Of a DNA stretch of 64,000 nucleotides, positions 4,261 through 50,892 are shown piece by piece. The DNA lies in the NCBI GenBank assembly GCA_030704615.1, contig CM060733.1:59830001-59894000 (forward strand). Reading direction: 5' to 3'. This DNA is from Takakia lepidozioides. Taxonomy: Eukaryota > Plantae > Bryophyta. The stretch's first letter is position 1; each line of letters begins with the position of its first letter. The notes below the pieces were generated by a model. It was not told the origin of the DNA. It did not search any database and saw only the letters and a program-made list of their open reading frames with translations. The position numbers and the translations under genes were made by a program.

Positions 4261-4697
4261 CAATATGGAGGGTCACTCATCGGGTCCACTTTATAGGTCC
4301 ACTCTAGAGGGTCCATTCTGTAGGTCACAAGTCGAGGCACCCACTCATCGGGTCCTCTCTTGAGGGTCCACTCTGCAGAATCATCTTTAGAGGGTACTCT
4401 GCAGGGTCCACTTTACAAGTAACAAGCCAAGGTGTCAACCCTTAAAGACCCTAATATATTGGTTGTATATTATTATTGCCTATGGCCCGGCCATTACGGA
4501 CCCACGGGGTCATCCGCAGTCACAGGCTGCCTCCGCCCACCTGGTCCACTCTAGAGGGTCCACCCGTTGGACCTCCACTCTGCCGGGTCCACTTTGTGGA
4601 TCCACTATGGAGGATCCACTTTGGAGGATCATCTCTACAGGGTACTCTGCAGGATCTAGTCTACAAATGACAAGCCAAGGTGTCCACCCGCCCTTAA
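4261..4697. repeat. Two diverged tandem units built from GGGTCCAC(T)-like motifs; probable old TE terminus
   Basis: Both units end ...GGGTACTCTGCAGG...ACAAGCCAAGGTGTC..CCCTTAA. Unit 1 continues directly AGACCCTAATAT; in unit 2 AGACCCTAATAT resumes only at 18216. Confidence 0.75.
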
Positions 4698-5140
4698 CCC
4701 TTAAGGGCCCGCCATTGGCCAAATTTCATCCCTAAAAAAAGTAACCTCTAGTTAGTTAACTGAGGCTACACACCTACCCTGATACATAAAAAAATGAACC
4801 TTACCAAGTTTATCTTGTCTACCATATACATCTACTCATCAAATTGTGGAAACATTCACTATAAATCATGAGAGATTTTAGTGTTTTAGTGAGAGGGTTT
4901 TGTTTTTTGGGATTTTGTAAAGTATAGAATTTGAACTTTGACCAAACTATTTAGGTAATGGGTGGATTTTTCCTGCTCCTGTCTCCCACATATAGAAATG
5001 TGGTATGTTGTCATAGCCAACTACTGTGGAAGTTTCAAATCAAACAACTTTTTCTTTTATTAGGGTCTTTTGTATGTGTTTGAGGTGAGGGCAAAATGTC
5101 CTCCATAGCTTATTAATTCAAAGTCAGCCCTCACAAGAAA

Positions 5141-5562
5141 GCCTCTCATTTTAAGATAATAGGGTCTTCAATGGGCACGTGCGATGTGGCCGGTGGGCCC
5201 CGCGCACGGACGCCCGGCTCCCCAGCACCCCGCCCTCCGCTTCGCGCGATCGCCTAGCCGCGGGCGCGGCTGCAGCAATCGCGCCCGCGCCCCCGTCCGC
5301 CGCGCGGCCAATTCCCCGCCCATGAGTCCGCGGCCCTCCAGTCTGCCAGTCCATTGCTGGCCAGTCCGCTGCCTAGCAGTCTGCCAGTCCGCCAGTCTGC
5401 CCGCCAGTCCGGTGCTGGCCAGTCCGGTGCCCAGCAGTCTGCCAATCCGCCAGTCTGCCCGCCAGTCCGCTGGCCAGTCCCCTGCCATCCAGTCCGTTGA
5501 CGGCGCAGGATCGCCACCGTCCATTCCCATAACCCATCCGAGCCCTCCATTTTTAGGGCTGC
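5141..5562. repeat. Left TIR of the MULE (GC-rich, with CAGTCYG array)
   Basis: Inverted match to 17328-17657, ending ...CCATTTTTAGGGCTGC; longer than the right TIR because of internal insertions. Confidence 0.92.
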
Positions 5563-7313
5563 GAAAATGGCAATGATCTTCCCACCAAATCCTGGCGCTC
5601 TCTTTTGACGGCTGTTTGTTGTCCGATGTTGCGGTAAGCGTTTCCAAGCACGCGACTGTTCCTCTTTTGCGCGCGATGTTCATGATGATGATGAAACGTG
5701 TGCTTGAACATGAGAAGACTGTCTGGGCACTACAGCCACCATCGTGCATATGCTTCCACTATTTTTGCCTTCTTGTTGTGCTTTCGGGAACCTTCGTTTT
5801 ATGGTTTGGTTCTATGTCATAAATATGGAAAATGCGGACATCTGTCGTCGATAATGTCCTCTGCTTGTGATCCGTCATGATACGTTTAGCCCCTTCATAC
5901 TGCATCCCTCATGAGAGCCTTCACAAGTTTAGTTCGTTAAAGGAACCCATGGGTAACATGGGCGCGAAAATGGTGGAAGCGTATGCACATGGGGGCGTGT
6001 ATTGCAGATTTCGTATCGGACGATGGGACTGTTTATGTGACCAAGTATAGCGGCTTGCATCCGTCGTGCATAAGTTGTGGAAAAGGGTGGAGAATCTGAA
6101 GAAACCCAGCTTTGTGATGGATCCACATGGTATTATATAAGGGATGGCAGCACAAAAAAGCAATTCGAGTCGTCAAGGAACACCATCCAGTCGTAAGGTC
6201 CTCAAACATCCACACGCACCTGCTGAATGCAGATGTCTGAGCCACGACGGGAGTAGGTGCAGAATCAGTACATTGTCGCATTTGCCAGGAGACGGACCAG
6301 GCTGAGACAATTGCATCTGCAAATGCGCGTGGATGTTTGAGGTCCGTTGTGTCGTGAGTCTGTTCACAGTGGGTCCGCTGGCCCGTCAGTGCTCCGGATA
6401 TTCCCCTTATCGCGTGCATAACAGTCAGTTTGGAGGCGGTCTGCTGGAAGTCCGTCTGTTGGATATCAGTCTATCGCACTTGTGAATTTGTCAGTCTGTT
6501 GTGTCGGAAGTCTGTTGCACTAAGTCTGTTTGACTTCTTATTTTCCCTCCGGTCAGTCTTTTGGCTTGTTCTCCCGCCAGTCTGCCGAAACGTCCGTTTG
6601 CTGGACAGTTCTCCTCTATGGATATCAGTCTGTTGGACTGTGCATGCATCAGTCTGTTGTGCCGCGAGTCTGTTCGCAATGGGTGTGTTCGACTTTCCTG
6701 TTCTCCCCTTAATCTCTTTTGTCTTCATTCCGCTGGCAGGGAAGTGGCTCCAATATGAAGCCGCTTCGCCTCAGCAAAGCGAATAGTCAACGGGACTGGC
6801 GGTCCGGTGGACTCTCGGCCCGATGGGAAATGAGTCTGCTGCACTTGCGAGGACCGTGGATGAATTTAGTACGATGCGTTCGTTCGGTGGACGTATTCAA
6901 TGCGATGACGGCGGATAGTTGGCGCCTGTGAAATCGCGGCACGTTGGCAGTGCCATGCCCGCTTTCCCCCTTCTACTTCTACTTTCTTCTCATGTTCCCT
7001 GTGCGATCGACTCCATTCTCTTCGTGCCTATTTCTTCGCACTGTTTTGCACTGTTTTGTTTTCCTCTTTGCGTTTCCATCACCGTAACAAAAGACGACCG
7101 TTCTTCCCCAGGTGTGGAGAGTCGCGGTGAGCCGCGAACCGTCGCAAACACACTCGCCTTCGTAACAACTCGAAGTTCATCAGCTCGGTGAGGTTCTCAC
7201 TTGCTGCGGTGTTTCCATTCCATTCTGTGTCCTCTTCTTGCTTAGGGTGAGTCTTTTCATAGGACTTCTATCTGTCGCTCATTGTCCTTGCACCTTCGTT
7301 TCATTCTGCAGCG

Positions 7314-10300
7314 ATGGAGGATGCTTGTGAAAAGGGTGGAGCGGACTGGGTGGATTTTGTGCACCAAACCAGACTGAAGAAGGAGCGAAGGTACTGGTAC
7401 TCACCAGACGAGTTTGATCATAAAATTGTGGAAGCATTTGTAGACCTCCGCGCCCGGAAGCCCAAAAACTCGAATTGGCAGAAGGACAAGCTCTTCTGTC
7501 TCTTCTGTGAAGAGGTTATCAAGGACAAAATCCAACTAAATCGGCATTGTGTTGACACGGGTTGCAAGGAGACTGTTGCAATGATTCCATGGGATTTCAA
7601 GCCTTGGCCGATACTGAAAGAAATGTCGATTGTCAAAGAGGCCACAATGCGCTTGCGCGGATCAGTGCTTGACCCCCGCACTTTGGAATTAGACGAAGTG
7701 CGCGCACGGTATGGCGTCCATTGTGGTGGCCCGTCAATGGAGGATTTGCAAGTGCAGGGAACGCCGGACGCTCCCAGAAAACGTAAACTGAGTGATGGGG
7801 CCCAAACGAAGGAGAGGCAAAAAAAGGAGAAGGCTGCAAGGTCTGCTCGCGAGGCAAGGGCAAAATCCACGCAACAGACTGAACCCCGTCCTGGGCGGCA
7901 GACCCACACCATCAGTACTGATACTGAAAGTGAATCTGCTCAGGGCCTGGAAGGGGTGACAAGTCCAGTGGACATTGACTTGCCTGACCAGACTCGGCAG
8001 CAGACTCACACAAATATCGCGACCCATGCCATCGGTTTAGGGTCAAAACCAAAAACTCAACAGAGCACTGAAGGGCCAGTCTGCCCTGGCACATTGCGCC
8101 TCGTTGACTTTGGGCTTTTCCCACCTGAGTGCCCACCAATTGGGGATCCAGACTTCTTCCGTTATTTCTACAGAGTTGCCCAGTCAGGTCTGCTACGCAC
8201 ATTCATCCGACAGGCGGAACAGAACTGGTTGAACAGCTTTGAAGATGAAGATGACGATGATGAAGTAGAGGAGGTAATGGTCAGTCTGACCGCCCAGTCT
8301 GTTCTCTGTGCTGTTTGAGTCCATCATCGGGGTCACGTTGCCTATTCAGTCTGGTCAGTCCGCTGCGTTCTCTCCTCAGTCCGCTGGCTCACTCCGCTCG
8401 TCAGTTAGTCTGTTTTATATCGCTGCATTACTTACTGAGTCCGTTTGTCAGTCCGCTGTCCAGTCCACTGGTATAGTCTACTAGTTGCCTCCACCCTACG
8501 TACGCACGTTACAGTCTGCTGGTCTGTGAGTCCAGTCCGCTGCATGAGGTGAATATAGAGTCCACGTCCATGTTCCTGACGTCCAAGTTCTCTGCCGTGT
8601 ACCAGGATGAACGTGTTTCTATTCGTAGGGCCATTCAGGCTTGGCGGATACCTAGCAATGATGCTCTTTTACAAGCGACTGCAGTGCGTGCGGAAGTGGA
8701 CCGCGTGCGAGAGTACATATTATTGAAGTATCCTGGGTCATCTGCTGCTATAGCGGCATTACATATTCAAGACACGTTGGGGGGGGGGATGCGTCTGGGA
8801 CAGCCGAGTCTGCCATCCAGCAGACTCCCATTCAGCAGGCCGTCATCCAGCAGACTCCCGTTCAGCAGCCTGTCATCCAGCAGACTCCAACGGAGCAGAC
8901 TCCCAACGAGCAGCCTGTCATCCTGCAGACTCCTCTCCAGGAGCCCATCATGCAGCCCATGCCAATGGGAAGTCCTGTCATCCAACAGACTGCGGACCAG
9001 CAGACTGACCAGCAGACTGCCTTTCTCTCACATAGCACGACGCTTTTTGCAGTTTGGCGATCGCCATCACCGGTAATTCGACCCGGAGCTGAAGACCTCA
9101 CACTTCCCCGGCTTAGGGTGGGAGAAATTAATCCCCATTTGGATTGGCATAATGAGCTCCACCGGATTGTTGCGGACCGCCGGTGGTCATTTGTACCCTT
9201 TCATTATTCCATGGAGTTTTCTATTGAGGAAGCCAACCATGTTCTAGAAGCCGCCTCTGCTGTTGCCATTGAAGCCACAAGCGACCAAAATGCGCCGCCT
9301 CTACTTGTGCAGCTGATTCTCATGGATGACCCTGAAGACCTCAGACATATGCCTATGGCACATCCAACCTTTGGGGTGCGAAGAAAGCACTTGTTCGGAT
9401 TGACTGAGGAGGACTTTGAGCGCATGGCAGCTTCCTTCCTACAACACAGATGGATGCAATTTGGCAATTTCCGCTCATACAACAAGTTGATGAAGGATCT
9501 GCATAGTTTGAGGATGGACTTACTCCATGGAACAGACCATTCACAGAAGTTTGTGGTGGATGACGCATTGCACTGGTTTGCATTGGTGATGGAGCGAGCA
9601 GTATTCGACATTGTTTTGCAGAATCCCAATGTCTTCAAAGTCCTGTGGTGTGGGATCCCAACTGAAGACCGCATCGGCGCCATTGCTCATCTCGATGGAG
9701 CATGCCTGTGCCGGCAAATCAAGGACATTGGCCTCGTCGGAAATCTCTTGAAGGTAAAATGTTATGGGCAACTTTCGTGTTTCAGCTCAATTTCTTTTGC
9801 CAACTTTTTTACAAGTTCACATTTGCATAAACATGTGTTGCAGGGCGAGTTGATCTGGGAGACAAGCAAGTGCAGGCTGCTTTCGACTCTTTTGCCAGAG
9901 GTGCAAGGGACCTTGTCCTGGCTTTACAAGGAGTTCGGGAGACTGTCCAGCAGACTGGCCACAAGAATGTCGAACAACATATTCCCCACGACACATGTGG
10001 GCAGACTGCCCAAGTCTGGAGACCGAGCATGTGCACCAGACCGTCCCGGGTAATAGGCCGGATCACTCCCAGCAGACTGCCCCGCACACACATACTCAGT
10101 ATGTGCAAACAGTACTGAGCGGAGCGAACTTTGCAGACTTTGCAGCAGACCGGAGAACAGACCGGCCAACAGACTGCCCCTCAGCCGACTGTGCAGCAGA
10201 CCAGCGAACATGGCCACCAGACTGCCCCTCAGCAGACTGTACAGTAGACCGACGAATCCAGCCAGCAGATTGCCCCTCAGCAGACCGTGCAGCAGACCGG

Positions 10301-13091
10301 CAAATCCAGCCAGCAGATTGCCCCTCAGCAGACTGTGCAGCACACTGGCGAACCCACTCAGCAGATGGCCGAGCAGACTATCCAGGAGACTAACAGCCAG
10401 TCTGTTCCCTGGATTGTGCAACAGACTCGGATGCACTGGCCTCACCGGGACCCTGTGGACGAATTTCTGCTGAGTTCCCAACAACATGTTTTTGGATCTG
10501 CCAGTATGAGTGTTTTGACCGAGTCCACTTTTCCCCCAGGCACATTCACTGACGACGTCATCAGGTCACCGGTAAAGCATTCTTATCCAGCTCCCCGTGG
10601 CCTGCCTTCTATGACCTTCCAGCTTAGTCCCGTTTTCGTGCGCTCAGTGGCGAAAGCGAAAGCCATAGATGAGTCTTACGTGATGACCGAACTCAATCTG
10701 GGAACGCAAAACCGTATCATAGATCTTACAGAAGAGTCTGAGGAAGCAATTGCCGGTGGGTCTTCCATACATGTTCTTGATGTTTCCCAAGTCCATGGAG
10801 ATCCGAACACCCAGCCGGCTGTCCACCAGACTGACCAGCACACTGAACAGTGGACACATGGAAGGACTGCCGAGCAACCTGTGGCGGGGCAGCATACTGT
10901 CTTCATTGATGAGCAGACTGAACCGCAGACTAACCAGCAGACTGCACAGGTCACAGATGGAAGGACTGACCAGGATGGCTCGGAGCGGCAGACTGCACAG
11001 CTCAGCTCTGACTGCACAGTTCAGACTGCACGGCCTGACCAGCACACTGCACACTTCACAGAGGGAAGGACTGACGACCAACCTGCCACCGAGCACATTG
11101 CCCACATTGAGGAAGAGACTGAACCGCAGAGTTGCCAGCAGACTGCACAGTTCACAGACGAAAGGACTGACGAAGAACCGGCGGCCGAGCAGACTGCCCA
11201 CATTGAGCAACAGACTGAACATGCTGGCAGGCACACTGACAAGGAACCACATGCGGCGCAGACACCGTCTGGTATAGCGCTGGATTACATGGAGTCTGCT
11301 CCCTCACCCCTTGGGCAGGTTGTGTCATTTCCTCTTTCAGCACTGTTGTTTATGTTTTAGCACATTGTGAAATTGGGCTAATTCGTCATTTTGCTCGGTA
11401 TCCTCACAGGATGTTCGTCCCTCCGTCGGCAGACTGTCTACTTCTGAGGACATGACATCTTCCGCCCATGCTGCAAACGTGGGATCGACAACCAAGAAAG
11501 GTGTGGGGGTGAGCACGCCCCCCGATGCGCGGGTCAGTTCTACGCATGCGACCCACGAAGCTGCAAAGACAGGTCCAGCAAGTGTAAACAAACCTGCTGA
11601 CCAGCCTCTGTTGCGAAGTAGGGCGGCAGCGCTGCGTTTGTCTGCTCTATCCAGCCCGCCTACAGCTGTCCCTGCTTCCCAGGGGAGAGGCAAAGCCAAG
11701 AAGCGGACTGTCGTGGACCATGCTGAGGAGGTCGAGGAGGGTCCGAGTACCAAGAGACCGGCGAAGAAAAAGTCTGGCGTCTTTATGAACAAGAACCGCA
11801 AGCTGGCCTTGGACATGGACAAAGATGTGGGTCGTTTCCTGGAGCAGCACAGGTGAGTACTGTGCTCAGTCTCCTCGTCTGTCTTTGTCGTTAAGTGCTT
11901 TGCGCTCTGTTGTGGTCAGTCTGCACGCTGGTCAGTCTGCTGCTGGTTTCATCATTGTCTGTTGTGGTTAGTCTTGTCAGTCTGATGAATTGTTCAGCCT
12001 GTAGAGTGTTTGGTACCATGTTGACGTCAGTCTGTTCAGTACATGAGGCTTCCCGAAGGATGGTCTGCTCTGTGCAGGATGGGTGCTCGGTTTGGCAAAG
12101 CACATGCTCTGCACGTGAAGGCGGGTAATTCCATGCTGATGTTTTTTGAAGGGGACCCACGGTTTGAATGCGGACTGTCGCCGGATGACATAAAGGCGCT
12201 CCAGAAGGTTGAGTCGGAGTGCACAGATAGACTCCTGGAGCTGTGGTGTCGATTCTATGAGAAGTCGGTTGAGGCTGCGTTCACCAACACTATTGCTGTT
12301 CTTCCAACGTCGACGTGGACGGTGTTGAAGTCATTGGGGGTGGGGCAACATGAAAGCCTTCTGGAGGTCTTGAAAGGTTGCCTCAGCACTGAACGACTGG
12401 GCAAGGACTTGAAAGAGTGCGATTTCATTTTGGTGCCAATTGGGGACGAGTAAGAACTCTTCCGAGTCTGCTGAGACTGTCTCCTGAGTCATAGTCTGGT
12501 TTCGCAGTGTCGTCTTGACTCTGAGCGATTAAGTTGACCTCTGTATTTGTGCAGTGGACTGGGTTTGAAGATTGAGTCTGCTGAGTGGTCGGTCTGCTGA
12601 GTGTCAGTCTGCTGAGTCTGCCCATCATGATTGTGCAATGACGCCATGTTGTTTGATACCATTGCAGGGGGCACTGGAGTGTTTGTATCATCGACCTCCG
12701 CAAGGGCTGTTACACTCACCTGAACTCTATCAGGGACTCGCATAAATGTCCCTTTGTTCTAGGGTGGATTCGGAAGCTTCATGCTGAGTGCTTAGGGTAC
12801 TCGATGGACTCACCAGAGTGGCATGAGATTGTCCAAGCATTTCAGTTCCACGCGCCTGATGTGCCCCAGCAACCATTCAGCTGGGAGTGTGGCTTTTACG
12901 TCATGTCATTCATTCAAGTGTTTTATGAGTGGGTAAAAGTCAGAGCAAATGTCTCCAAGACTGCAAAGCCAGAGAGAGGAACACCTTTCACGAAGGACTG
13001 GTTTACTTTCAAGTTTGCACTTGGGCAGCGAATGCAGTGTGCCCAGTATATCGTGCGGGGGTTGGACAATGTAGAGAAACTGCTCTCATGA
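7314..13091 (+). pseudogene. MULE accessory gene: C2HC zinc finger, Q/T-rich repeats, C-terminal Ulp1/C48-like protease; disrupted in this copy
   Basis: Exons approx. 7314-8273, 8606-9753, 9844-11319, 11411-11852, 12078-12449, 12668-13091 with GT-AG ends. Motifs: FCLFCEEVIKDKIQLNRHCVDTGC; NLS-like PRKRKL; DFILVPIGD-E-GHWSVCIID...THLNS...VPQQPFSWECGFYV. Lesions: frameshift at G10 tract 8779-8788, in-frame TAG at 10245-10247, probable further shifts near 9950-10140. Confidence 0.8.
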
Positions 13092-13660
13092 GTATGATGT
13101 ACTTGTCATGTGAAGTCTATGTACCGAAATAAAAAATGCGAGTCTTTTCGCTTACTATTCCAGTGGTGATGAGCACTTTTGTGTACTGTGGGTGCTGGCA
13201 TGTTTTGTAATGTTGTCACTAAACTCAATGGACACAATGGTGTCAATTTTTCCATGCACTGTGCACCCGAGTCTGCTGAGCTTGAATGTGCGAGCAGTAC
13301 GCTGCCGAGGCTAGGACTGGTGGGTCTGGTACCTAGTCTGGTAGGCACCATGTCCATGAGTCCGCTGGGACGCTGGATTGGCATGAGTCGTTAGGGAGGT
13401 AGTCCACTGGAGCCTGTCCATTTTGAGTCTGTTGTTGTGGATGAGTCTGCTTGAGACTTAGTCTGTTGGAAGAGTTGCAGGGATGAGGTGGAAGTGTGGT
13501 GAGCAGACTTTTGGAGTGGGCAACAGACTGACCAACAGACTGGCTTACTGGCGCTCGCAGTCTGTTGACTGTGACTCTGTTGGGAGACTGCGTGAGTCCG
13601 TTGGGAGACTGTGCATTAGTCCATTGCGGACTTGTATTTCAGAAAGGGACAATGCTACCA

Positions 13661-13855
13661 GAGGAATTGCAGACTTATATTGTCTTCTTCGTGACACCTA
13701 CACGACGTGAAACCTTGTCTCTTTTTGAGGAATTGCAGACTTATATTGTCTTCTCCGTGACACCTACACGACGTGAAACCTTGTCTCTTTTCGAGGCATT
13801 GCAGACTTATATTGTCTTCTTCGTGACATCTACACGACCTGAAACCTTGCGAATT
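13661..13855. repeat. 66-bp tandem repeat, about 3 copies
   Basis: GAGGAATTGCAGACTTATATTGTCTTCTTCGTGACACCTACACGACGTGAAACCTTG... starts at 13661, 13727 and 13793. Confidence 0.95.
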
Positions 13856-13981
13856 TTCGAGTATATATGTGCTGCAGGTGCAGGTGCAGACACCCTCTTG
13901 CTGGTTCTCCGCAAAACCCTAGGCCGGGTTTTCCAGGCCTCCACGAAATCTCGTCTCCTTTTCAGAGACATGTTGTTGTTG

Positions 13982-16900
13982 TCAGTTCAGAGGACGGAAA
14001 GCCTTCGCTGCCGCAGGGTGCAACATTCCAGCCGCACTTTTCGCCAGGATATCAACGAGCTGCCCTCTGCACATATGAAGAGCAGATCGGGCATGTGCCT
14101 CCAGGTATTTGTCATCACCTACAATGCGAAGTATGTCCGCGAATTCTTGTTCCATTGAGGCTGAGACCTCCAGAGGTACATCCGGAGGATGTCTTTCCAT
14201 GAACTGATTGGATTCGTCGTTGCCGCCGGCACCATTGCCCAAGAGCAAGTTAGGTAATCCTCCATGAATGGTTCCCAGCGCCGTGCCACAAGCGCGCACA
14301 AGGAGGCCATCCTGCAGGTCAGGGTGAAGCATCTTCAGGACACGGACCTGATGCTTGCATAAGTTTCCCTTCATTGCCCATGGGCACGTGCAACAACCCC
14401 AATCGCAATCAGGATTGTAAACAATGTATGTTGTGCCGGGGTGGTTGCTGCTGAGAACGTAGGCTGGTTCACCAGGACCCAAGGGAAGAGTAACACTCTC
14501 AGCAGGAATGTCTCGTGCCGCAAGTATAGAACTGGATATGTACTTTTCGTGTTTGTCATTTCTTATGAACCCGTGGGTCTTCAAATGGATTGCGTACCAG
14601 TAGTGTGTTAGCACACGGCCAGTGAGTTCCCATATAAGCCAGTCCACTCTACGACCACTCATCTTGCCTTTCCCCATCTTGATGGCAAGTCTTGCCTTCA
14701 GATTTCCATGGTATGCCTCAATGCTTGCGTTTGTGTCTTGGCTCGCATGAGGGACATGGCGGGCTGCTGTACACCACATTGCTATTTTGGGCTTCCAGTA
14801 CTGTTCGATATAGTCAAGAAATTCATGTCCTTTCGGGTATTTTGACCTCATACGACGGATTCTCCTTGCAACCCACCGAAGCGCTCTTTTCTCGTTGCGT
14901 GGTCCCCCTCTACAGTACATGAGGTCTCCCATATCCTTCAACAAGTTTACAGCGGTCACCGGATCCTTCGTTTTCTTGCATGATTGCTTCACCCATGCCT
15001 TGCGGACATGCCAAAGGCAGAGGAAAATGAGTACTCCTTCAAAAACAATTCTGCACAACACACATGGTACACATTAGAGTCTTGGGATCGGACTGCAATG
15101 GTGGACTGCCGGAGTGGACTGTAACAGCGACCTGTATCAGCGGGCAGAGCCACTGGACTCGCCCAGTGGACAGTACAATGCCATGACGTTGATGTGCTGG
15201 AATAACCCCATTGGACTACCCAGTGGACTTCCCCTAGCTAGGACTGGGGCAGCGGACTGCATCAGCGGACTGCCCCATTGGACTGCCACAGCGGACTGCC
15301 GAGTGGACTTGGCAGCGGACGGCCGACCCCAGGGACTGCTGAGTGGACTGGCAGCGGACTTGGCAGCGGACTGCCGAGCGGACTTGCCGGGGACTGCCAG
15401 CGGACTTGCCAGGGGACTGATGAGCGGACTTGACAGCGGACTACCAGTGGATTTGCCCAGCGAACTGCCATCGGGTTTCGCCACAGGAGTCTGCCAGTGG
15501 ACTGTAGCAATGGACTGCTGCAGTGGACCTCGACAATGGACCGGTGCTGTGGACCAACAGACTTACCGAATAGCGTTGATTTCTGCTTCGGCATCGTCCA
15601 CAATGAAGGCATTGGGTCGCCAGCTCGGCAAATCTGCGAGGAGTGAATCGCGCAAGGCTCTCATCCACGGAACCAGGTCTCTTGTCCGATTCCTCGCGGA
15701 TAGGATATAGGCAACTGGTATACCGTTCAACCACTCGTCGAAGACCATCAACGTGTACAATGGGAACTGTTGGAATGCACAATGTAAGATGGTCAGAGCA
15801 TGCAAATTCCGCTCAGTTCTGCACGAGAAGACTTCATAAGAGTGATGAGGTCTGCAGCGGTTCACAATGGGTCTGCCCCTCGGTCTTCCGCAACGTACAC
15901 ATGAAAACATACAGAAAGGGTCAGCACACCAAATTTTATGTGAATGTTGCATGGTACTATGCTATCATGCTCGTACAAGTCCATGGAATCGTTCGAATAG
16001 TACCTTGTCATGATTTGTCCCAAAGGTTGCATCACATGCAACGATACGGTCATGTCCTAGTTCCAGCATTCGTCGTTTCTGCCACGGAGTCTGTATGCCA
16101 ATAGTGAATGTCAAATCTCCATCAAAATGCTCGAATGTTGGCTCTAATTTCTCCTCTTGATAGAAAAAAACGGACGCAGGATTCTGGTCTCTCCACATGC
16201 GCACACTCTCTGCATCATCGGCGTGCTTTTTGAAGGTTTGCCACGCACGTTTCTCGGCAAGGTTGCGAACATCTTGCTCCAACAAGAAATCATCGCGGGT
16301 CCATGCATCGCCCAAGCCGGTGTTGTTCATCACGTGCTCTTTATGCTCCATCATGATTTGGGCGACCGACAGGCCTCGGCACAAACACTCGACGACCCAG
16401 GCTTTCAATTCCTCGCTAATGTGTGGTGCATAGGCGTGGCGGGTGTTCCTGAACTCTGCGGACTTCCCATGCGAGGGTTTCCCTTGCGCATCTGTATGCT
16501 CCATGTTGTTGTAGTACGTGAGGACACAGATGTCAGGGGCGAGATAGCATTGCTGGACCTTGAAACAGCATTGGCAACCACGTTTGTAAGACTCTCCATA
16601 CTCCGACTTCTTTCTCCTTGGGCCTTTATGAGGGCAAGATGTTCCAGCACCCACAAGAGGTCCTCCACGCTTCTGTTTTGGATCCTCCACTATTGCCTTG
16701 TTGGTGCGCTTGTCATCAGGACCGTAGCAGCATTGATACCTGGACAGAAAATTCTAAAATCGATATCCAACGACTTGAGGAAGCATAAAATCAGAGAACT
16801 CGTGAAACAAAAAATGGCAACAGACATGCAATGAAACGTCAAAAGGACTGAGGATGGTGCACACATAATACTGGACAGAAATGTGTTGGCTCTGGGTGCT

Positions 16901-17183
16901 TTTCGCGAGCCGGGTTCCACTTTAGAATGGACATTCACCCAAAACTGAGTGGGGTAGTCCTCCAAACTCTCCTCTCCCAGGACGAAGTCACCAACTCTAT
17001 CCCAAGGTATGCAGGCCTTTTCAACATTCACTCGCACACCCATAAACCCATATTGCGTCTCACTCTTCCAATGGAGATCCTTCCTGTTGAAGGGTCCTGG
17101 TTTTGCTGTTTGCAAACATTGTCGAAGAGTATAAGCGGGCTTTCCGTGATCAGTATATCATCGGGTTTTGCTTCCACGTCCAT
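13982..17183 (-). CDS. MULE DDE transposase with WRKY/FAR1-like Zn domain and SWIM finger (apparent frameshifts near both ends)
   Basis: Exons approx. 17183-16865, 16739-16004, 15766-15567, 15050-13982 splice in frame. Motifs: IPWDRVGDFVLGE, YQCCYGPDD, KRGCQCCF..EHTDAQGKPSHG, ACDATFGTN, FIVDDAEAE, CLWH, TNASIEAYH, SWIM CTCPWAMKGNLCKH. The ATG at 17183 and the C-terminal SLKRRRDFVE segment are each out of frame with the main ORF. Confidence 0.9.
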
Positions 17184-17327
17184 GCCCTATACAGTACAAA
17201 GGACACGCTTCTGAACATGCAAGAAACGCGCCGCAGTACAGGACACGATCGACAACGTGCCAGGAGAACAGTGCGCACGTTCGCGGCTGCTGGCAAGTGG
17301 CAGGCGGCAGGGATGCAGGTTTGAATT

Positions 17328-17657
17328 GCAGCCCTAAAAATGGAGGGCTCGGATGGGTTATGGGAATGGACGGTGGCGATCCTGCGCCGTCAGCGGACTG
17401 GATGGCAGGGGACTGGCCAGCGGACTGGCGGACTGGCAGACTGCTGGGCAGCGGACTGGCCAGCACCGGACTGACGGGCAGACTGGCGGACTGGCAGACT
17501 GGAGGGCAGCGGACTCATGGGCGGGGGACTGGCCGCGCGGCGGACGGGGGCGCGGGCGGGGCGGGCGGGGTGCTGGGGAGCCAGACGTCCGTGCGCGGGG
17601 CCCACCGGCCACATCGCACGTGCCCATTGAAGACCCTATTATCTTAAAATGAGAGGC
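17328..17657. repeat. Right TIR of the MULE (CRGACTG array)
   Basis: Starts GCAGCCCTAAAAATGGAGGGCTCGG; reverse complement of the left TIR. Confidence 0.92.
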
Positions 17658-18381
17658 CACAAGAAATCCACTACTTGATAAAATGATGTTTCACTCAATC
17701 ACTCTGGTGAAGGTGTGATATGTAATACAATAGTGAGCCTAGAGAAAAAAAAACTAGATCCAATGGTACAATCTACAAATGTGGGCCCCCGAATGGGCCA
17801 AGTTACTTTCCTGCCCACATGCCTGCAAATTACCTACTCCAGTAGAGGTTTCTGACTGTGGAAGGGCCACGTAGACTTTCAACCTCCATGCCGGGTGAAT
17901 AGATGTATAGTCCACCGCCGGCATGCATATGGCAATTTGACGGCTAAACATGTGCCAATTATATCTCGCCACGCAGATGGTCAACTCTGCGTGGCCCCAC
18001 CCCATGCTCCAATATTATGACCCTGCGTTTTTAGAAAATCTATAGGTCAGAGAATTTATTAGAGTGTACTGTTTTCAATATGAGAATGTGGGCCATGTTG
18101 CCAGAATATTAATTGTAATTGAAACCATTGAAAAATATTAAGATATGCGAAAAGTAAAGAAAAAAATCTACTTCCTCAAAACCTGAATTGGGTCTCTTGG
18201 GCCCTTAAGGGTTAAAGACCCTAATATTGTATAATGTAAAGCGAATGCAATTGATCCTCTTATTTTGGGTATTACGTTAATGTAAATGTTTATAGTTGCT
18301 AGATATTAATGACTCGGAATACTGTAAACAAAGTACAACATCATAATAACATTGGAAACAAATGATACAATAAACACATTA

Positions 18382-21024: not shown

Positions 21025-24000
21025 GTGAACGGAGAGGTGGAAGGCAGCTGTAGCACAGATGGCGTCGAATGCGGGGCGGGGCTCCCCGCTTCATCCCGGC
21101 AGCGCCTCAAGCAGCGACTAGCAAGCTCTCGCGGCATGCTTTTGGTGCAGGAGCAGGAGCAGCTGGGAGTGGTTCACCGTACCTCGTGGGCTACTCGTAA
21201 CTTTTTTAGCACCGCCTCTTCGCTGAAGCAGTTTGCCACCAGAGGTTCGCGATCATGGCTCATCCGGGGGGCTAGCTCAATGTCTCTGGATTGTGCCGAT
21301 CCCGGCAGCACCGCCTCTTCATTTGCATCTTTAAGCTCCTTCGACTTGCCGGGATTGATAGGACTTGAAGATGTAGCCCGGCACGTTAGCGAGCAGGGGG
21401 TAACTGCAATTGAAAATTTAGAGACACGGAACCTAAACATTGTATCTGGTGGCACCCCAGTAGCGAGTGCTTCTGTAGACACCTACACCCTAAATCAGAC
21501 AAATCAAAGTCACCTGGACGTGGCACAGATATCTGTTTCGCCACATAATTATGTACAACAGGAAGCTGCAGATTCTTTGAGCTTGGGAAACCGTTCTGCT
21601 CTATTGGATGTAGGGAGGGGTGAGGAGACTGTAGGATTTTTCCACCCCATTGATGAACTGCCAGTACCTGCAAACAGGCTCCCAAATCCCATTGTTTCCA
21701 ATCACTTGTTTAGAGTTGAAGAGGACCTGCCAGGGGTGACTAATCCAACAGTGGAAAATGGTGTTACCGAGTTTCTGAATGAACAGCCTTTGACCCACGT
21801 TCAGACAATTATAGAAGAACAGCAGAAGGCTTTGAGTGCTGCTGGTGTGATCCAGGCTGCATTCCGGGGGTTTAGGACTCGAGCTGCAATCAAGTCCATG
21901 CATGCTGCAGCTGTGAGGATCCAGAGTTTTTACAGGGGTTGGCTTGCCACAAAAAATTACAGAATGTGGAGGCAGCATCTACAATTCCAGAGGGAGGTAG
22001 AGGAGCGTGCCGCCATGAGAATGCAGTGTTGTTACCGCGGGTGGCTAGCTAGAAGGAGCTATAAATTAGGGAGGGAGAAAGTGGTGATACTTCAGGCAAT
22101 GGTTCGGAGCAGGCAAGTAAGGAAGCAGTACCAGCAGCTGTACAATGCAGTGCTCACTCTCCAAAGAATGTGGAGAGCTGCCAGAAAGCGACTTTTGCAA
22201 CAGCAGAGGGAGGTACTAGAGCACGCAGCATCGAAGATTCAGAATTCTTATCGAGGTTGGCTAGCTAGAAGGAACTACAGATTAGTGAGAGATAGGGTGC
22301 TGTTGCTCCAGGCTTGTGTTCGGAGGCAACATGTAAGGAAGCAGTATTGGGAGCTCTACATGGCGGTGCTCACTCTCCAAAGGACATGGAGGGCTTCCAG
22401 AAGCCGACGTTTGAAACTGCAGAGGGAGGTGCAAGATCGTGCAGCAGTGAAAATCCAGAGTTCCTATCGAGGTTGGCTAGCTAGGAAGACCTACAGATTA
22501 GGGAGGGAAGGGGTGGTGTTGCTGCAGGCTTGTGTTCGGAGGCAACAAGTACGGAAGCAGTATGGGCAGCTCTACAGTGCAGTGCTGACAATCCAAAGGA
22601 CATGGAGGGCTTGCAGATTGCGGCATTTGCAACTGCAGAGGAGGTTGCAGGAGCATGCTGCAGTGGTAAAGATCCAGAGTTCTTACCGAGGTTGGCTAGC
22701 TAGCAGGAACTACAGATTAGGGAGGGCAGGGGTAGTGTTGCTACAGGCTAGTGTTCGGAGACGACAAGTAAGCAAGCGGTATCAACAGCTGTACAATGTA
22801 GTGCTGACTCTCCAAAGAAAGTGGAGGGCTTCCAGAAGGCGGCATTTGCAACTGCAGAGACAGGTGCAGGAGGGTGCAGCAATTAAGATCCAGAGTTTTT
22901 ACCGAGGTTTGCAAGCTAGGAAATACTATCAAATACAAAGGGTTAGTGTGGTGAAGCTCCAAGCCGCTGTTCGCAGGAAGCAAGTAAGAGATCAATATAG
23001 GCAGCTTTGCAACGCAGTGCTCACAATGCAGCGGATGTGGAGGGCTGCCCGAGCGCGACATTTGCAAGAGCAGAAAGATGTGGAGGAGTGTGCGACACTG
23101 CTGATTCAGGCGCATTCATGGGGTGTTGCAGTCAGGTATTGGCTTCACACGTGCCAGGCTGTTGCCCTGACCATTCAGCAAGCCTGGCACAAGCAGCAAC
23201 GATACAGGGTTCACAGACTAAAGCACCAGGTTGTGACAGCTGTTGTGATTCAAGCACATCTGTGCGATTATGCACTACAGCATATGCTTAGGCGATGGCA
23301 TGCGGCTGCATTCACCATCCAGTGGAGTTGGCGTCATTACAGACAATCAAAAGCAGCCGTGAAGATACAGGCCACTTTTCGTTCATGGGCTATAAGGAAA
23401 CGGAATGTGATGGCAGCAGTTACCATCCAGCGCTGGTACAGGTGTTGTTTGAGGACAAGGGCAAGTTTGTTTGTGAAGCAGCATGCAGCTGTGTTCATTC
23501 AAAGTTGGTGGCGGGGCCTTCATTATCAGCAGCTCCACAGAGGGGCACTTCAGGCTCGGCATGAAGCTGCAGTAATAATACAGCGCCGATGGAGGTTATT
23601 TCAACTTGGAAGAGTGGAAAGATTGATTCCAGAGCAAGCAGTTGTTGGTGTAGAGGCTGGCATGTGTACTTCTTTTTTCAGGCAACAGAAGCAGCTATTG
23701 CATGTGGGAGCCTCAACAGACCAGAGTCACTTGCACAGGCACCAGCACCAGCATGTGCAAGGGGCAGCTGTGACCATTCAGGCGGCTTATCGTGCATTTG
23801 CCTGCAGGAAAAAATATCAAGCAAGATGCCAAGAAGGGTCGTTGATTCAGCGATCGTGGCGAGAGAAGGAACGAATGCAGCTTTTAGGGGAAAATTTAGG
23901 TTTAGAAGTGGTGACTGGAAAAGTGGTCAGATCTGCTGGGGGCTCCACTGTCTGGAGGGATGTAATAATTTCTGAGTTTCCAGATGTTCCTTCAACTTCT

Positions 24001-25569
24001 GGTACCTTTTCAAGTGCAGATTTTTCCAAGGAAATCAAGTATACAGGTGTTAGAGAGGCAGACAGTGGCGGTGCAACCCTGCAACATTCAGTGATGGAGT
24101 TGGGTGCTGGAGAGGAGGGTTTCTTCTGTATTGCTGGACTTACGGAAGACACAGATAGTTTACAAGTCAGATTTTGTGAGACCAAGGAGGTTGTACCAAC
24201 TCAAATAGACAACAACATGAAGGGATATGTCTCTTTAACTTCTGATTTGAGTCCATATGCAGACTCTCTTAAAAAGGCCCATGTGAGGGATAGAGAAGCA
24301 GAGAATAGTTGGGGACCCCAGGATCATGTATGTCCCTTGAAGTTGCAGTTGGTTGCTGAAAATATGGGTCCACCTGGTACTGTTGGGCGGCTGGAAGCCA
24401 AGGAAAGCTCCCGAGGTATCATTATTGAGACCAAGGATAATGTTACGGCCACTCAAATCAATGGTGAAAGATACTCCTTGTCTGCGGAAGCTGAAAGCAC
24501 ATCTGCAGAGGATTGGAATAATGTGCACATAGACAAACTGGACAGTGTTTTAGACACATGCTTGGCAGTGCTTCACCCACTGCCTCCAGTCATCTCATCC
24601 AGTTCTTGCAAGCAGCCTTTGCCCCTTGATTTTGCTGATACAGCTGCTCCTTTTTTTTCACAGAGGGCACGTGAGGTGGCTGGTGGAGTCGACAATGAAG
24701 GCGATGTAAAACTCAACTTGAGCAGTACCTCGACAGCAGAGAAACAGCATGTTTGTTGGGATGTCTATGAAGTCAGTGCAGGGGAGGTTTATGCCAGTGC
24801 GACCATCTCTCAACCCTGTAATGATGGAGGATCACCTAGCTTGGAAGCTCATTCCAGCCCTCAGCAGGAGTGCTTTGGTGACGAGACTGGCCCCAAGAAG
24901 CAATCGAAGAGTCTGAAACGTGATCAGGAAAGGCTCCAACAATTTGCACAGGTGTTCCTGACAATGCGTCACATATCTAATCAGCAACAACATGCTCAAT
25001 GTGCTCCACCTTTCCCGCCCCCACTCTTGTCATCATGCTCTGATGGCCCCAACAGTTTGGCTGCGGAGACAGTGCAATGTGGCAACTCACATATAACAGA
25101 TGGCTTTAGTCCCACAAACAATGGAGGTCATTTTTGTGTCCACTTGCCCTCACCAGCCAATGAGGGCGAGGTGACTTCAGTTGGTGACCTGCTCCTGCCT
25201 CCACGAGCACCTCAGGTGGACTCTGACATCGTCACCAACAGTAGTCAAGTACCAGCACACACAGGAGGCACAGATGTGGTGCTGGATATGGTGGATCTAC
25301 TGAAGAAGATGAAGCATTACTATGATACAGAGGAGCATGATGCAACTGGCTCTGAGTTGCTCCCAGGAGGGGATGTAGAGGATGGCAGGGCTTGGAATCT
25401 TCAAACTGAAGGTTCCAAGCCCACATTGGCAAAAGCTTTGGGGGGAAAACGGTTGGGACTCCGTGATGTCAATGCGGTATTTGTGGTGCTTGTTGCCATG
25501 GTGTTGTATACTAGAACAGTGTGCCGCGATGTTTTCTTCGGCCGAAGACAGTCATATCGCAAACACTAG
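21025..25569 (+). CDS. Large poly-IQ (calmodulin-binding) protein with ASPM-like IQ array and C-terminal hydrophobic segment
   Basis: Uninterrupted 1514-codon ORF (first ATG at 21136; true start uncertain). Many IQxxxRGxxxR-type motifs, including five 72-73-aa units. C-terminus AVFVVLVAMVLY followed by a basic tail. Confidence 0.85.
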   Translation: MNGEVEGSCSTDGVECGAGLPASSRQRLKQRLASSRGMLLVQEQEQLGVVHRTSWATRNFFSTASSLKQFATRGSRSWLIRGASSMSLDCADPGSTASSFASLSSFDLPGLIGLEDVARHVSEQGVTAIENLETRNLNIVSGGTPVASASVDTYTLNQTNQSHLDVAQISVSPHNYVQQEAADSLSLGNRSALLDVGRGEETVGFFHPIDELPVPANRLPNPIVSNHLFRVEEDLPGVTNPTVENGVTEFLNEQPLTHVQTIIEEQQKALSAAGVIQAAFRGFRTRAAIKSMHAAAVRIQSFYRGWLATKNYRMWRQHLQFQREVEERAAMRMQCCYRGWLARRSYKLGREKVVILQAMVRSRQVRKQYQQLYNAVLTLQRMWRAARKRLLQQQREVLEHAASKIQNSYRGWLARRNYRLVRDRVLLLQACVRRQHVRKQYWELYMAVLTLQRTWRASRSRRLKLQREVQDRAAVKIQSSYRGWLARKTYRLGREGVVLLQACVRRQQVRKQYGQLYSAVLTIQRTWRACRLRHLQLQRRLQEHAAVVKIQSSYRGWLASRNYRLGRAGVVLLQASVRRRQVSKRYQQLYNVVLTLQRKWRASRRRHLQLQRQVQEGAAIKIQSFYRGLQARKYYQIQRVSVVKLQAAVRRKQVRDQYRQLCNAVLTMQRMWRAARARHLQEQKDVEECATLLIQAHSWGVAVRYWLHTCQAVALTIQQAWHKQQRYRVHRLKHQVVTAVVIQAHLCDYALQHMLRRWHAAAFTIQWSWRHYRQSKAAVKIQATFRSWAIRKRNVMAAVTIQRWYRCCLRTRASLFVKQHAAVFIQSWWRGLHYQQLHRGALQARHEAAVIIQRRWRLFQLGRVERLIPEQAVVGVEAGMCTSFFRQQKQLLHVGASTDQSHLHRHQHQHVQGAAVTIQAAYRAFACRKKYQARCQEGSLIQRSWREKERMQLLGENLGLEVVTGKVVRSAGGSTVWRDVIISEFPDVPSTSGTFSSADFSKEIKYTGVREADSGGATLQHSVMELGAGEEGFFCIAGLTEDTDSLQVRFCETKEVVPTQIDNNMKGYVSLTSDLSPYADSLKKAHVRDREAENSWGPQDHVCPLKLQLVAENMGPPGTVGRLEAKESSRGIIIETKDNVTATQINGERYSLSAEAESTSAEDWNNVHIDKLDSVLDTCLAVLHPLPPVISSSSCKQPLPLDFADTAAPFFSQRAREVAGGVDNEGDVKLNLSSTSTAEKQHVCWDVYEVSAGEVYASATISQPCNDGGSPSLEAHSSPQQECFGDETGPKKQSKSLKRDQERLQQFAQVFLTMRHISNQQQHAQCAPPFPPPLLSSCSDGPNSLAAETVQCGNSHITDGFSPTNNGGHFCVHLPSPANEGEVTSVGDLLLPPRAPQVDSDIVTNSSQVPAHTGGTDVVLDMVDLLKKMKHYYDTEEHDATGSELLPGGDVEDGRAWNLQTEGSKPTLAKALGGKRLGLRDVNAVFVVLVAMVLYTRTVCRDVFFGRRQSYRKH

Positions 25570-26927: not shown

Positions 26928-29511
26928 TCACACTAACGATGGAACAAGCCTGATAAGAATGAAGGTGTAAAGTACAGAGAGGACAGCTCCAACTGGGATG
27001 GTAACCATCCAGGATGCCACAATCTCACGAACGACTTCACCCCGCACACTGTTAAGGCCACGTGCAAAGCCAACCCCCATGACTGCCCCAACCAGAGTGT
27101 GGGTGGCAGAGATGGGCAGACCAAGTCGTGAGGCAAGTACCACCACAGTGGCAGCTGCAAATTCTGCTGCAAAGCCACGAGTCGGTGTTAACTCCGTAAT
27201 TTTCTTCCCTATGGTGGCTATGACCCGATAACCCCAAACCATCAGCCCAGCTACTATCCCAAATCCGCCCCAGGCCAGTACATCAGTGGGCATGCCTGCC
27301 TGAGGCCCTGTACTTAACCCATTGCCATGCAGAATGGCTAAGGCGGCAGATATGGGTCCAATCGCATTGGCAACATCGTTTGCCCCATGTGCAAATGACA
27401 TAAAGCATGCTGACAACACCTGCAAATACCCAAATATGCTGTACACGATGCGAAGCTGTGTGCCTTTGGGCCCTTCCACCTTTGACATCAAACTCAAAGA
27501 TTGCTTGCCCACCTTCTCATCTGTCCTAGTTTCCACAGGCAGTTCGCAATATGCACCTAGCAGACCACCCAACTGGCGCCGAATGACCACAGTAATAAGA
27601 ATTGCCCCTATCATTCCAAAACCCAGTGCCTGTGCTGCCGACAGTAAAACACCTGCCTTGCTAGGAAATGCAGTGAATGACAATGCAGCCACGCCAATGA
27701 ACACAGCTATTGGGGCTGCTGTGGCTGCTGCTTGCCCTGGATTTGATGCACTGTACACAAACTGCTTCCCCACCCATCCCCTGTCATTGCTAGCCCACTT
27801 CCTTCATCCTTCACTTGCCATCATCTACTTCTTGCACAGCATTAAAGGAAGCTATATATTCTCTAAAGCATAGTGAACATAGGCATTTCAGCAACATGAA
27901 AGTGGATTTGAAACACTTCGGACAACGTAAAGCAAATCAGTTGTCCTTTAACTATGCTAACAGCATGCCTCGTAGGCAAACACCATAATACAATATCCAG
28001 ACTTAAGTCAGTCGCCACATAAAATTATCAAAATATTTGAAGGAGTTCACTGTTGCTGATATTAGGTTTGAAATATGGCATCACAAGCATTAATGCCCTG
28101 AAGACTTGTGGAGGGGGACCAGAGATATAGTACTTACAGTTCGAATACATTTGTATACAATGAATGAAACCACTGCACCCATTAAGGGTGATACTACCCA
28201 GGATGAGACAACACGAGCCAAAGATTTCCAATAAACTGCCCCAATCCCACCATATACAAGGCCAAATCCCACCATTGCTCCAATAATACAATGTGTGGTC
28301 GACACGGGCCATCCATAGTAAGATGCCACCTGCACCCACACCCTGTGTGCTTGTTACTTGCCCTAATTTGCCAATACAGGCCTTACTTGCAAAAGTATTA
28401 CTGCAGGGGACGACTTGGCATGTATTTTCTTATGTCAGCTAGTGGGATGGTTTCACAAAGTCTTGTGCAAGTTCCTTTGTGGAACTACTAAAACTACTAT
28501 TATGTGGAATTTCAAGTTACACACACAAGACCGGTTGATTGCGCTATGCTATTTGTGACAGCTAATCAGCTTCCTACCCTGATTACCTGAAGGCCATTCA
28601 CTGAGCTTTGGTCATCCATAGTCACTTTGCCAAAGACACAGCTCCCTGCCAATAGGAGAACTTAAACCTACCCACCTAGAACCTCAAAACTACATTGCAT
28701 AACCTTTCAACAATTTACTCACCTGCAGCCAGGTGCCAGCAGCTCCAAGAGATGAAATCATTCCACAAAACAGCAGTGAGTCTTTCCCATTGAACACACC
28801 AGCTGTCAAGATCCCTGATTGCATTGTGTGGCTCACATGAGAGCCTACCATGAAGGCCCCACTGAACTCTAAAACTGCAGCTGTCAACACAGCCTGGCGG
28901 AGAGAGAGAGCACCAGAACCCACTGACGTACCCATGGCGTTGGCCACATCATTGGCACCGATGTTCCAGGCCATGTAGAAACCAAACAGCAGAGTCATAT
29001 AGGAGAGAACGAAAGTTTTTAGGGGCAGCCCTGCTGTGGATGGCATGTACAGGGGCACCACCAGTGCCGCCAACCCAATAGCTGCTGTGATGCCAACGGC
29101 AGTCCGAGGTGCAATGTGAAAAGCTTCTGCCATGCCTTGCATTCCACTGCGAGTCTCCACCACCTTCTCATTCAAGGTACTAGCAATGTTGGTGTTCGCC
29201 CTATGCAGCTGGGCGTCAATTTCGGACGCCTCATCGAATTCTCTCTGCAAGTCTCCACCCTCAGCATCCGCAAAGGACGACTTGATCACAATGTTGCGAC
29301 GTAGGACAGTGAGGCCCCCGTGCAAGTTCACCTTGGGAATACCGTAGCTCTGCCATTGATGCCGCTGTATGGCCCTTGCCTGTCGAGATAGATTGCGAAC
29401 TTGACCAGGCCCGGCAATGCGTATCCCCTGCAACAAACTCTGCCCACTTCCCAAATTACACCCCCTTGCAACTACTTCGTGGGGGCAGCAAGCTAGCCCT
29501 ACCCTAGTCAT
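26928..29511 (-). CDS. PHT2;1: Plastid low-affinity phosphate transporter (PiT family)
   Basis: Exons 29511-28723, 28329-28138, 27761-26928. PiT signatures AWNIGANDVANAMGTSVGSG and SFAHGANDVANAIGP, plus GWPVSTTH and GLPISATH; N-terminal transit-peptide-like extension. Confidence 0.95.
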
Positions 29512-50750: not shown

Positions 50751-50892
50751 GAAGTCCTACTCAGGCAGCCGAAAGACTATGAACTCCCAACATGTCCATG
50801 CGTTTGTAATGCTTGGGTTTCGGAAGGGGCTTTGTCAAAATATCAGCTGCCATATCATCAGTTCTACAGTAGCAAAAAATGATTTTGCCAGA

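What the first reader, a model, noticed from the sequence alone, without database searches (positions are those of the whole stretch)
5141..17657. Candidate TE-encoded anti-silencing system: a MULE coated in one polarised motif and carrying a zinc-finger/Ulp1 protein
Seen: AGTCY(G) is densely repeated on the + strand in the left TIR, at ~6420-6680, in three introns of the + gene (8274-8605, 11853-12077, 12450-12667) and up to ~13470. From ~13500 it reads mostly as RGACT (66-bp repeat, transposase intron 15051-15566, right TIR). So the non-coding copies mirror around the point where the two genes converge. Known: Arabidopsis VANDAL MULEs encode a transposase, a Ulp1-domain protein and VANC, which binds short motifs amplified in the element's non-coding DNA and removes methylation. 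Inference: this may be an independent version of that design in another plant lineage. The cargo protein would recognise AGTCY arrays and bring a SUMO/Ubl protease to the element's own chromatin. No separate VANC-like ORF was recognised.
Basis: partly seen in the sequence, partly recalled or inferred. Interest (0 to 1): 0.9.

Follow-up and report, generated by a model that had tools for sequence, protein, structure and literature searches.

The report
Moss Mutator transposon coated in motif
This is a real, recently spread jumping gene of a moss (probably Takakia) that fills much of its DNA with one 8-letter word and carries a helper gene for a zinc finger plus a protease; it looks like a separately evolved version of the self-protection system of Arabidopsis VANDAL transposons, but which protein reads the word, and what it does, is untested.

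Summary
Real 12.5-kb MULE: 9-bp TSD, 96%-identical TIRs, DDE/SWIM transposase, and a convergent six-exon cargo gene (one C2HC finger, unknown domain, Gln-Thr linkers, Ulp1). The word is AGTCYGYT: 73 exact copies inside, 4 in 51 kb of flank. Non-coding copies face the sense strand (106:10), but cargo exons carry it in the opposite orientation (52:14), mostly as Gln-Thr codons. The mirror therefore holds only for non-coding DNA. This copy is broken as assembled; other copies lack the four frameshifts, and putative RNA contigs leave the element at predicted splice sites. A sister family fills the same transposase intron with another word (13:0). Moss-metagenome relatives keep the finger/Ulp1 cargo in the same place, most with their own words. 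No VANC domain was found, so this is not a VANDAL member. Best reading: cargo-read self-recognition and anti-silencing (about 0.42). Main rival: the transposase reads the word (about 0.3). No binding or methylation data exist. The scan noted this system many times elsewhere in this genome.

The parts
5132..5140 (.). Left target-site duplication CACAAGAAA (9 bp)
5141..5562 (+). Left TIR; outer ~180 bp free of the word, inner part holds the motif array (14 copies, 58-bp unit at 5345-5486)
5563..6354 (+). Motif-free stretch, no intact ORF, two internal inverted repeats; candidate 5' UTR region (GT donor at 5634)
6355..6739 (+). Non-coding motif cluster (11 sense : 1 antisense)
7314..8273 (+). Cargo exon 1 (ATG 7314; acceptor at 7311), with the zinc finger, a basic stretch and Gln-Thr linkers
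7497..7565 (+). Single C2HC zinc finger with classical C2H2 spacing (aa 62-84); helix positions -1/2/3/6 = D/I/Q/R
8274..8605 (+). Cargo intron 1, 15 sense copies : 0
8606..9753 (+). Cargo exon 2: Gln-Thr repeats (8810-9019), then an unknown ~230-aa globular domain; frameshifts near 8779 and 9749 in this copy only
9844..11321 (+). Cargo exon 3: long Gln-Thr-rich linker built from the antisense word (26 copies); frameshifts near 10015 and 10122 and a stop at 10245 in this copy; alternative acceptor at 9875 seen in one putative RNA contig
11411..11852 (+). Cargo exon 4, Ala/Ser-rich with a basic NLS-like end
11853..12077 (+). Cargo intron 4, 6 sense : 0
12078..12449 (+). Cargo exon 5, presumed N-terminal half of the protease fold (by position; no Pfam hit of its own)
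12450..12667 (+). Cargo intron 5, 5 sense : 2
12668..13091 (+). Cargo exon 6: Peptidase_C48/Ulp1 (E 3e-12); His (12672), Asn in place of Asp (12723), Gln, Cys (12888)
13092..13981 (.). Spacer between the converging genes; orientation of the word changes in 13450-13630; 66-bp tandem repeat 13661-13849
13982..15050 (-). Transposase exon 4: CxxH, catalytic Glu, SWIM finger; background motif count
15051..15566 (-). Transposase intron 3, 25 sense : 2; the orthologous intron in sister family L002 holds a different word
15567..15766 (-). Transposase exon 3 with the second catalytic Asp
16004..16739 (-). Transposase exon 2: WRKY/GCM-like zinc domain and first catalytic Asp
16870..17183 (-). Transposase exon 1 (ATG 17183); frameshifted, and the donor is not in phase, in this copy
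17328..17657 (-). Right TIR with motif array (12 copies, pointing inward)
17658..17666 (.). Right target-site duplication CACAAGAAA

Best explanation
A MuDR-shaped moss MULE with a family-specific self-recognition code. Shown: two convergent genes between long TIRs, and an 8-10-bp word amplified by local duplication wherever the element tolerates it (inner TIRs, long introns, spacer, and in-frame in the cargo's disordered Gln-Thr linkers), but not in the transposase exons. Shown: related families keep the same cargo layout while the word changes. Inferred: the cargo's single zinc finger, probably oligomerised or helped by the exon-2 domain, binds the many short sites by avidity. Inferred: it tethers a Ulp1-type protease to the family's own chromatin, where removing SUMO or another ubiquitin-like mark from silencing factors or from the transposase keeps the family active.
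For: Enrichment far above shuffles. Orthologous transposase intron filled with GRGTTACACTG, 13:0, in sister family L002 with 45% transposase identity. Several transposase clades each have their own word. Finger found at the cargo 5' end in L015, L018, L025, L033 and L039 (leave-one-out E 0.004-0.07 for L018, L033, L039 and 4e-7 for L025; L015 not recovered alone); Ulp1 exons lie convergent to the transposase in L015, L016, L025, L032, L033, L036, L043 and L058; L015 repeats the whole layout between TIRs. A young relative with no detected finger/Ulp1 gene (L010) has repeats only in its TIRs (n=1). The array lies inside the outer ~180 bp where transposase end-binding is expected (MuDR precedent from memory). 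Finger helix D(-1)/Q3/R6 predicts GAC by the textbook code (from memory), which is the word's core on the reverse strand (post hoc, chance about 0.06-0.2). Family is young, high-copy, and its cargo appears spliced. Precedent: VANC binds family-specific words in non-coding DNA (PMC5735166), and Ulp1-carrying VANC genes do the same (PMC13317346).
Against: No binding, methylation or protease data. One finger reads only 3-4 bp. The atlas look-alikes are JAZ/matrin-type fingers, many of which bind RNA or protein (own knowledge). The recognition-code match is unreadable in the decayed TGAYAC clade. The GTATTRC clade has motif arrays without a detected finger or Ulp1 exon. L015 has the cargo but only weak motif enrichment. 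The catalytic Asp position is Asn. The transposase's WRKY-like strand also changes from clade to clade.
Confidence: 0.42

Rival explanations
1. The transposase reads the word. The TIR arrays are its subterminal sites; copies spread inward because extra sites load transposase and let it activate or protect its own element. The cargo is a general helper, for example de-SUMOylating the transposase or repair factors, and does not choose the target.
For: Inward-pointing arrays in both TIRs. The transposase has a WRKY/GCM-like zinc domain whose recognition strand differs between clades with different words; WRKY folds read GAC-core boxes (own knowledge). The TGAYAC clade's word is W-box-like. AtMu1 transposase alone binds, demethylates and activates its copies (10.64898/2026.08.24.746577). 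GTATTRC clade has arrays without detected cargo.
Against: AtMu1 binding and demethylation are at the termini, not across the body (same paper). The word is absent from the outer ~180 bp of the TIRs. L010, with no detected finger/Ulp1 gene, has no interior copies. It leaves unexplained why a finger is kept on the cargo across clades.
Confidence: 0.3
2. No reader: a short repeat seeded in the TIR spread by slippage, gene conversion and template switching during transposition and repair, and survives only where it does no harm. The cargo is a captured protease unrelated to the word.
For: About 45% of AGTCYG copies are in tandem arrays. Copies fill only expandable parts: long introns and disordered linkers. 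Array lengths differ even between the two TIRs.
Against: More than half the copies are dispersed with unrelated spacers. The same word occupies at least a dozen separate compartments, and it is replaced wholesale between sister families at the same intron. The word is rich in CG and CHG sites, which methylation-driven decay should erode; CHG observed/expected is 1.32 inside against 0.9-1.1 outside.
Confidence: 0.13
3. The word acts on the RNA. It faces the sense strand in every motif-rich non-coding part because the cargo's JAZ/matrin-like finger or a host splicing factor reads it on nascent transcripts, controlling splicing, retention or 3' end formation; exons avoid the sense form.
For: Sense orientation in all nine motif-rich non-coding compartments, including one whose base skew runs the other way, and in L002's intron (13:0). 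Atlas features point to zf-C2H2_jaz, zf-met and zf-U1.
Against: Sense and 'pointing inward from the nearest TIR' are confounded here. Only 2 of 105 copies form a GTRAGT donor-like site. In the TGAYAC clade the word keeps one orientation on both the transposase and the cargo side. It does not explain antisense enrichment in exons.
Confidence: 0.08
4. A host DNA-binding protein (transcription factor or anti-silencing factor) reads the word, and the element accumulates its sites to recruit it.
For: Arrays sit next to both presumed promoters.
Against: Words differ between sister families in what is probably one species, which fits an element-encoded reader better. No host homologue of this finger region was found among 1.84 billion representatives.
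Confidence: 0.07

Closest known systems
Arabidopsis VANDAL/VANC (VANC21, VANC6) anti-silencing systems
   Same: MULE with accessory gene; short family-specific word amplified, often in tandem, in introns and upstream regions; sister families differ in the word; accessory protein has variable regions of tandem peptide repeats (PMC5735166).
   Different: VANDALs are non-TIR; this element has TIRs of 330-420 bp. VANC has DUF1985/DUF287, is MAIN-related and dicot-specific (PMC5735166, PMC13547354); none of that was detected here. VANC21 coding probes lack the word, whereas here cargo exons are rich in it. Function is proven there and untested here.
KAONASHI (KIU) / Ulp1-carrying VANC genes, and Ulp1-MULEs of melon, rice and grape
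   Same: An accessory protein with a captured Ulp1 domain inside a MULE; KIU-carrying VANDALs recognise their own words (PMC13317346).
   Different: That capture is dated to the monocot-eudicot split (PMC13317346); here the partner is a C2HC finger plus an unknown domain, the triad has Asn at the Asp position, and the host is a moss.
Maize MuDR (mudrA/mudrB)
   Same: Long TIRs, 9-bp TSD, transposase plus a second gene (PMC6446971); convergent transcription from the TIRs (own knowledge).
   Different: mudrB is small and of unknown function; no element-wide motif coat is known to me; the transposase here belongs to another clade, recalled as resembling Arabidopsis At1g60560/At4g13970 (memory, not tested).
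AtMu1 transposase and Spm TnpA as self-activators
   Same: Element-encoded proteins that bind short motifs in their own family and lower methylation (10.64898/2026.08.24.746577).
   Different: Their sites are terminal or subterminal; here sites also fill introns, spacer and coding linkers.

Membership tests
Mutator-like element (MULE) | 8-11-bp target-site duplication | tested here: met
   identical 9-mer on both sides
Mutator-like element (MULE) | Terminal inverted repeats | tested here: met
   96% identity in ungapped columns
Mutator-like element (MULE) | DDE transposase with CxxH and SWIM | tested here: met
   catalytic motifs read; SWIM E 0.002, just under the Pfam cut-off; 80 relatives share the exons; the Pfam MULE model itself did not hit single exons
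VANDAL/VANC | Non-TIR MULE | tested here: not met
   long TIRs present
VANDAL/VANC | VANC protein with DUF1985/DUF287 (MAIN/PMD-related) | tested here: not met
   no such Pfam hit on any exon; no relevant PDB hit for exons 1-2 at E<10 (I could not confirm that the VANC21 entry is in that copy); fold models too poor to compare
VANDAL/VANC | Short word amplified in non-coding DNA | tested here: met
VANDAL/VANC | Word differs between related families | tested here: met
   L002 orthologous intron; clade-specific words
VANDAL/VANC | Word absent from coding regions | tested here: not met
   52 antisense copies in cargo exons; transposase exons at background
VANDAL/VANC | Accessory protein binds the word and causes family-specific demethylation | not testable with these tools
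   needs EMSA/DAP-seq and methylomes
Ulp1 / peptidase C48 | Peptidase_C48 domain above the curated cut-off | tested here: met
   47.2 bits vs 20.7; best PDB matches are Ulp1 and SENP2
Ulp1 / peptidase C48 | His-Asp-Cys triad with oxyanion Gln | tested here: inconclusive
   His, Gln and Cys kept, Asp replaced by Asn; relative L015 keeps Asp; Asn occurs in some clan CE proteases (own knowledge)
Ulp1 / peptidase C48 | SUMO-specific isopeptidase activity | not testable with these tools
   needs an enzyme assay
DNA-binding C2H2-type zinc finger | CxxC-x3-hydrophobic-x5-L-x2-H-x3-5-(H/C) spacing | tested here: met
   spacing read directly and conserved in relatives; atlas 0.93 to C2H2 clusters; Pfam below cut-off
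DNA-binding C2H2-type zinc finger | Tandem fingers sufficient to read 8 bp | tested here: not met
   one finger only in this family; L018 may have several

The most novel reading that the evidence does not exclude
An old clade of TIR-bearing moss MULEs evolved, independently of eudicot VANC, a self-recognition system in which a one-finger protein carries a ubiquitin-like protease to a family-specific word. It would be the first sequence-specific transposon anti-silencing factor outside flowering plants, and a direct link between de-SUMOylation and transposon self-protection.
Probability: 0.35. Interest if true: 0.85.

Novelty: new variant of a known kind. Interest (0 to 1): 0.66.

Why it matters
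Sequence-specific anti-silencing by transposons is documented in only a few cases, and VANC is reported as dicot-specific (PMC12973397, PMC13547354). A non-homologous version in mosses would show that the design recurs. Ulp1 domains have been captured by MULEs several times and their role is still unknown (PMC13317346); a small finger fused to the protease, with a predicted target word and sister families with other words, makes that question testable by swap experiments in Physcomitrium. A compact reader with natural specificity variants could also serve for targeted de-silencing of transgenes.

Tried and rejected
Homology searches for the cargo N-terminus, the exon-2 domain and the Ulp1 exon found only the family itself or nothing; relatives came only from loci fetched with the transposase. 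Single-sequence folds were poor (pLDDT 40 and 53) and the fold searches gave only generic matches, so no fold is claimed. A third gene at 5563-6354 was rejected: stops in all frames, none of them among the listed variants of other copies (table truncated), and a weak tblastx hit to transposases was not supported by transposase profiles. Base composition as the sole cause of polarity was rejected: strand-specific shuffles do not reproduce it and one compartment runs against its skew. The idea that the word is an array of 5' splice sites was rejected (2 of 105). The idea that the word is a palindrome CRGWCYG was rejected: the CGG-starting variants are nearly absent and the flanks are asymmetric. 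Recognition-residue covariation was tried for both the finger and the transposase and is inconclusive. Sasaki et al. 2022 (EMBO J) is not held, so VANC1 details come second-hand. The host could not be confirmed by look-up.
Full report
Host and element. The window is from a moss-like plant. About 5,084 windows of 64 kb give 325 Mb, one chromosome exceeds 53 Mb, and Takakia lepidozioides has a 325-Mb PacBio assembly with N50 83 Mb (PMC13120521). Takakia is therefore likely but inferred. The element spans 5141-17657 with an identical 9-bp TSD and TIRs 96% identical apart from array-length indels. It sits inside a ~1-kb element with TTAA-flanked 13-bp ends.

Genes. The minus strand encodes a four-exon transposase with a WRKY/GCM-like zinc domain, DDE residues, CxxH and SWIM. 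The plus strand encodes a six-exon cargo: a single C2HC finger at aa 62-84, Gln-Thr linkers, an unknown ~230-aa domain, a basic stretch and a Peptidase_C48 domain with His, Gln and Cys kept and Asn at the Asp position. As assembled, this copy has four cargo frameshifts, one stop and a broken transposase exon 1. Contigs from other runs lack the four cargo frameshifts, and a loose end from one shows Gln at the stop, so the family gene is continuous. Several lesions are one-base shortenings of runs and may be assembly errors; I cannot tell. The family is young and abundant: over half of 5,255 contigs in one DNA run are 99% or more alike, and summed depth is tens of thousands against 50-100 for rare variants (not a copy number). 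In a run guessed to be RNA, contigs cover exons, drop in long introns and leave the element at the 7312 acceptor and near the 11322 donor; one joins the 9754 donor to an alternative acceptor at 9875.

The word. De novo counts give AGTCYGYT, extended CAGTCYGYTG. There are 73 exact copies inside and 4 in 51 kb of flank, and 68 of 123 AGTCYG copies are outside tandem arrays. Nine non-coding compartments carry 106 sense and 10 antisense AGTCY copies against about 16 expected; no shuffle reached any observed count. The protein's linkers are thus built from the word. Transposase exons and the four short or medium introns are at background. The longest gaps between AGTCYG copies are 1,287, 938 and 935 bp, over transposase exons and the folded exon-2 domain.

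Relatives. L002, from the same run as the family contig L001, encodes a transposase 45% identical and has the orthologous last intron filled with GRGTTACACTG, 13:0 on the sense strand; that word is absent from the window element. Eighty loci from metagenomes, most of which I recall as Sphagnum-associated (memory), encode the same transposase type. Several clades each have their own enriched word: TGTTACA, TGAYAC, GAAACATA, CCTWGGGA, GTATTRC. Decayed Ulp1 exons lie convergent to the transposase in eight loci, and the same finger lies at the cargo's 5' end in five; individual finger matches are weak but fall on the predicted strand and side. L015 repeats the whole layout between TIRs, though its motif signal is weak. 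L010, young and with no detected finger/Ulp1 gene, has repeats only in its TIRs. The tree does not resolve the window's position strongly, so I make no claim about order of events or transfer. Mirror polarity is not general: the TGAYAC clade is mostly one-directional.

Who reads the word. For the cargo: the finger is kept across clades; its helix (D-1, Q3, R6) fits GAC by the textbook code, and L018 (N, K, R) fits GG-containing words; the array is separate from the outer TIR. These matches are post hoc and weak, and the TGAYAC fingers are too decayed to read. For the transposase: inward TIR arrays, a WRKY-like domain whose recognition strand also varies by clade, the AtMu1 precedent, and a clade with arrays but no detected cargo. 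Passive spread explains tandem arrays but not dispersed copies or wholesale word replacement. An RNA-level role explains sense polarity but fails the splice-site test and the TGAYAC pattern. My odds: cargo reader with tethered protease 0.42, transposase 0.30, passive 0.13, RNA-level 0.08, host reader 0.07. Everything from binding onward is inference.

Comparison with what is known. It resembles VANDAL/VANC in two testable hallmarks, amplification and family-specific change of the word. It is not a member: it has TIRs, no VANC domains, and the word enters coding DNA. Ulp1 fused to a motif reader already exists in KAONASHI-type VANC genes, so the fusion is a recurrence, not a new principle. Two paper searches found no description of such a system in mosses; the library is incomplete.

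Verdict. The feature is real and well above chance. It is a new variant of a known kind: a probably independent, moss-lineage counterpart of the VANDAL design, with mechanism untested. The scan has noted the same family and sister families many times in this genome; those notes are not counted as support.

Noticed in passing
window 4694-4710 and 18199-18215; third end at 44402-44418: The MULE is inserted in a ~1-kb non-coding element bounded by TTAA and a 13-bp inverted repeat starting CCC, a piggyBac-like anatomy unusual for land plants.
   Followed up: partly
window 9754-9875: One putative RNA contig uses an acceptor 32 nt downstream of the in-frame one; this would end the protein after the finger and exon-2 domain, giving a protease-less isoform.
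   Followed up: partly
window 5563-6354: Motif-free stretch with two internal inverted repeats (5727-5768/5964-6005 and 6197-6243/6300-6345); a diverged relative in RNA and DNA runs keeps short patches of it in order. Unexplained.
   Followed up: partly
L018:14700-15480 (-): The related cargo seems to have several tandem Cys-rich finger-like units instead of one, and a near-palindromic word CCTWGGGA.
   Followed up: partly
L010:4900-5160 (-): Young 5.4-kb relative with 94-98% identical TIRs and what looks like a small acidic convergent exon, mudrB-like in position.
   Followed up: no
window 57073-60273 (-): 1,066-aa ORF with no Pfam hit but a GCM-like Cys/His pattern; probably another DNA-transposon transposase.
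   Followed up: no
window 48000-56000: Copia-type reverse transcriptase fragment (52820-53755) and a cluster of the word GGAACCG around it.
   Followed up: no
window 21025-25569 (+), 26928-29538 (-), 41835-43406 (-): Host genes: an IQ-repeat protein (ASPM-like by my reading), a PHO4 phosphate transporter and a RAM2-type GPAT.
   Followed up: no
window 4283-4630: Short degenerate repeats of a TCCAC word just outside the TTAA element, possibly the end of another repeat.
   Followed up: no
window 60557-61056: 500-base assembly gap.
   Followed up: no
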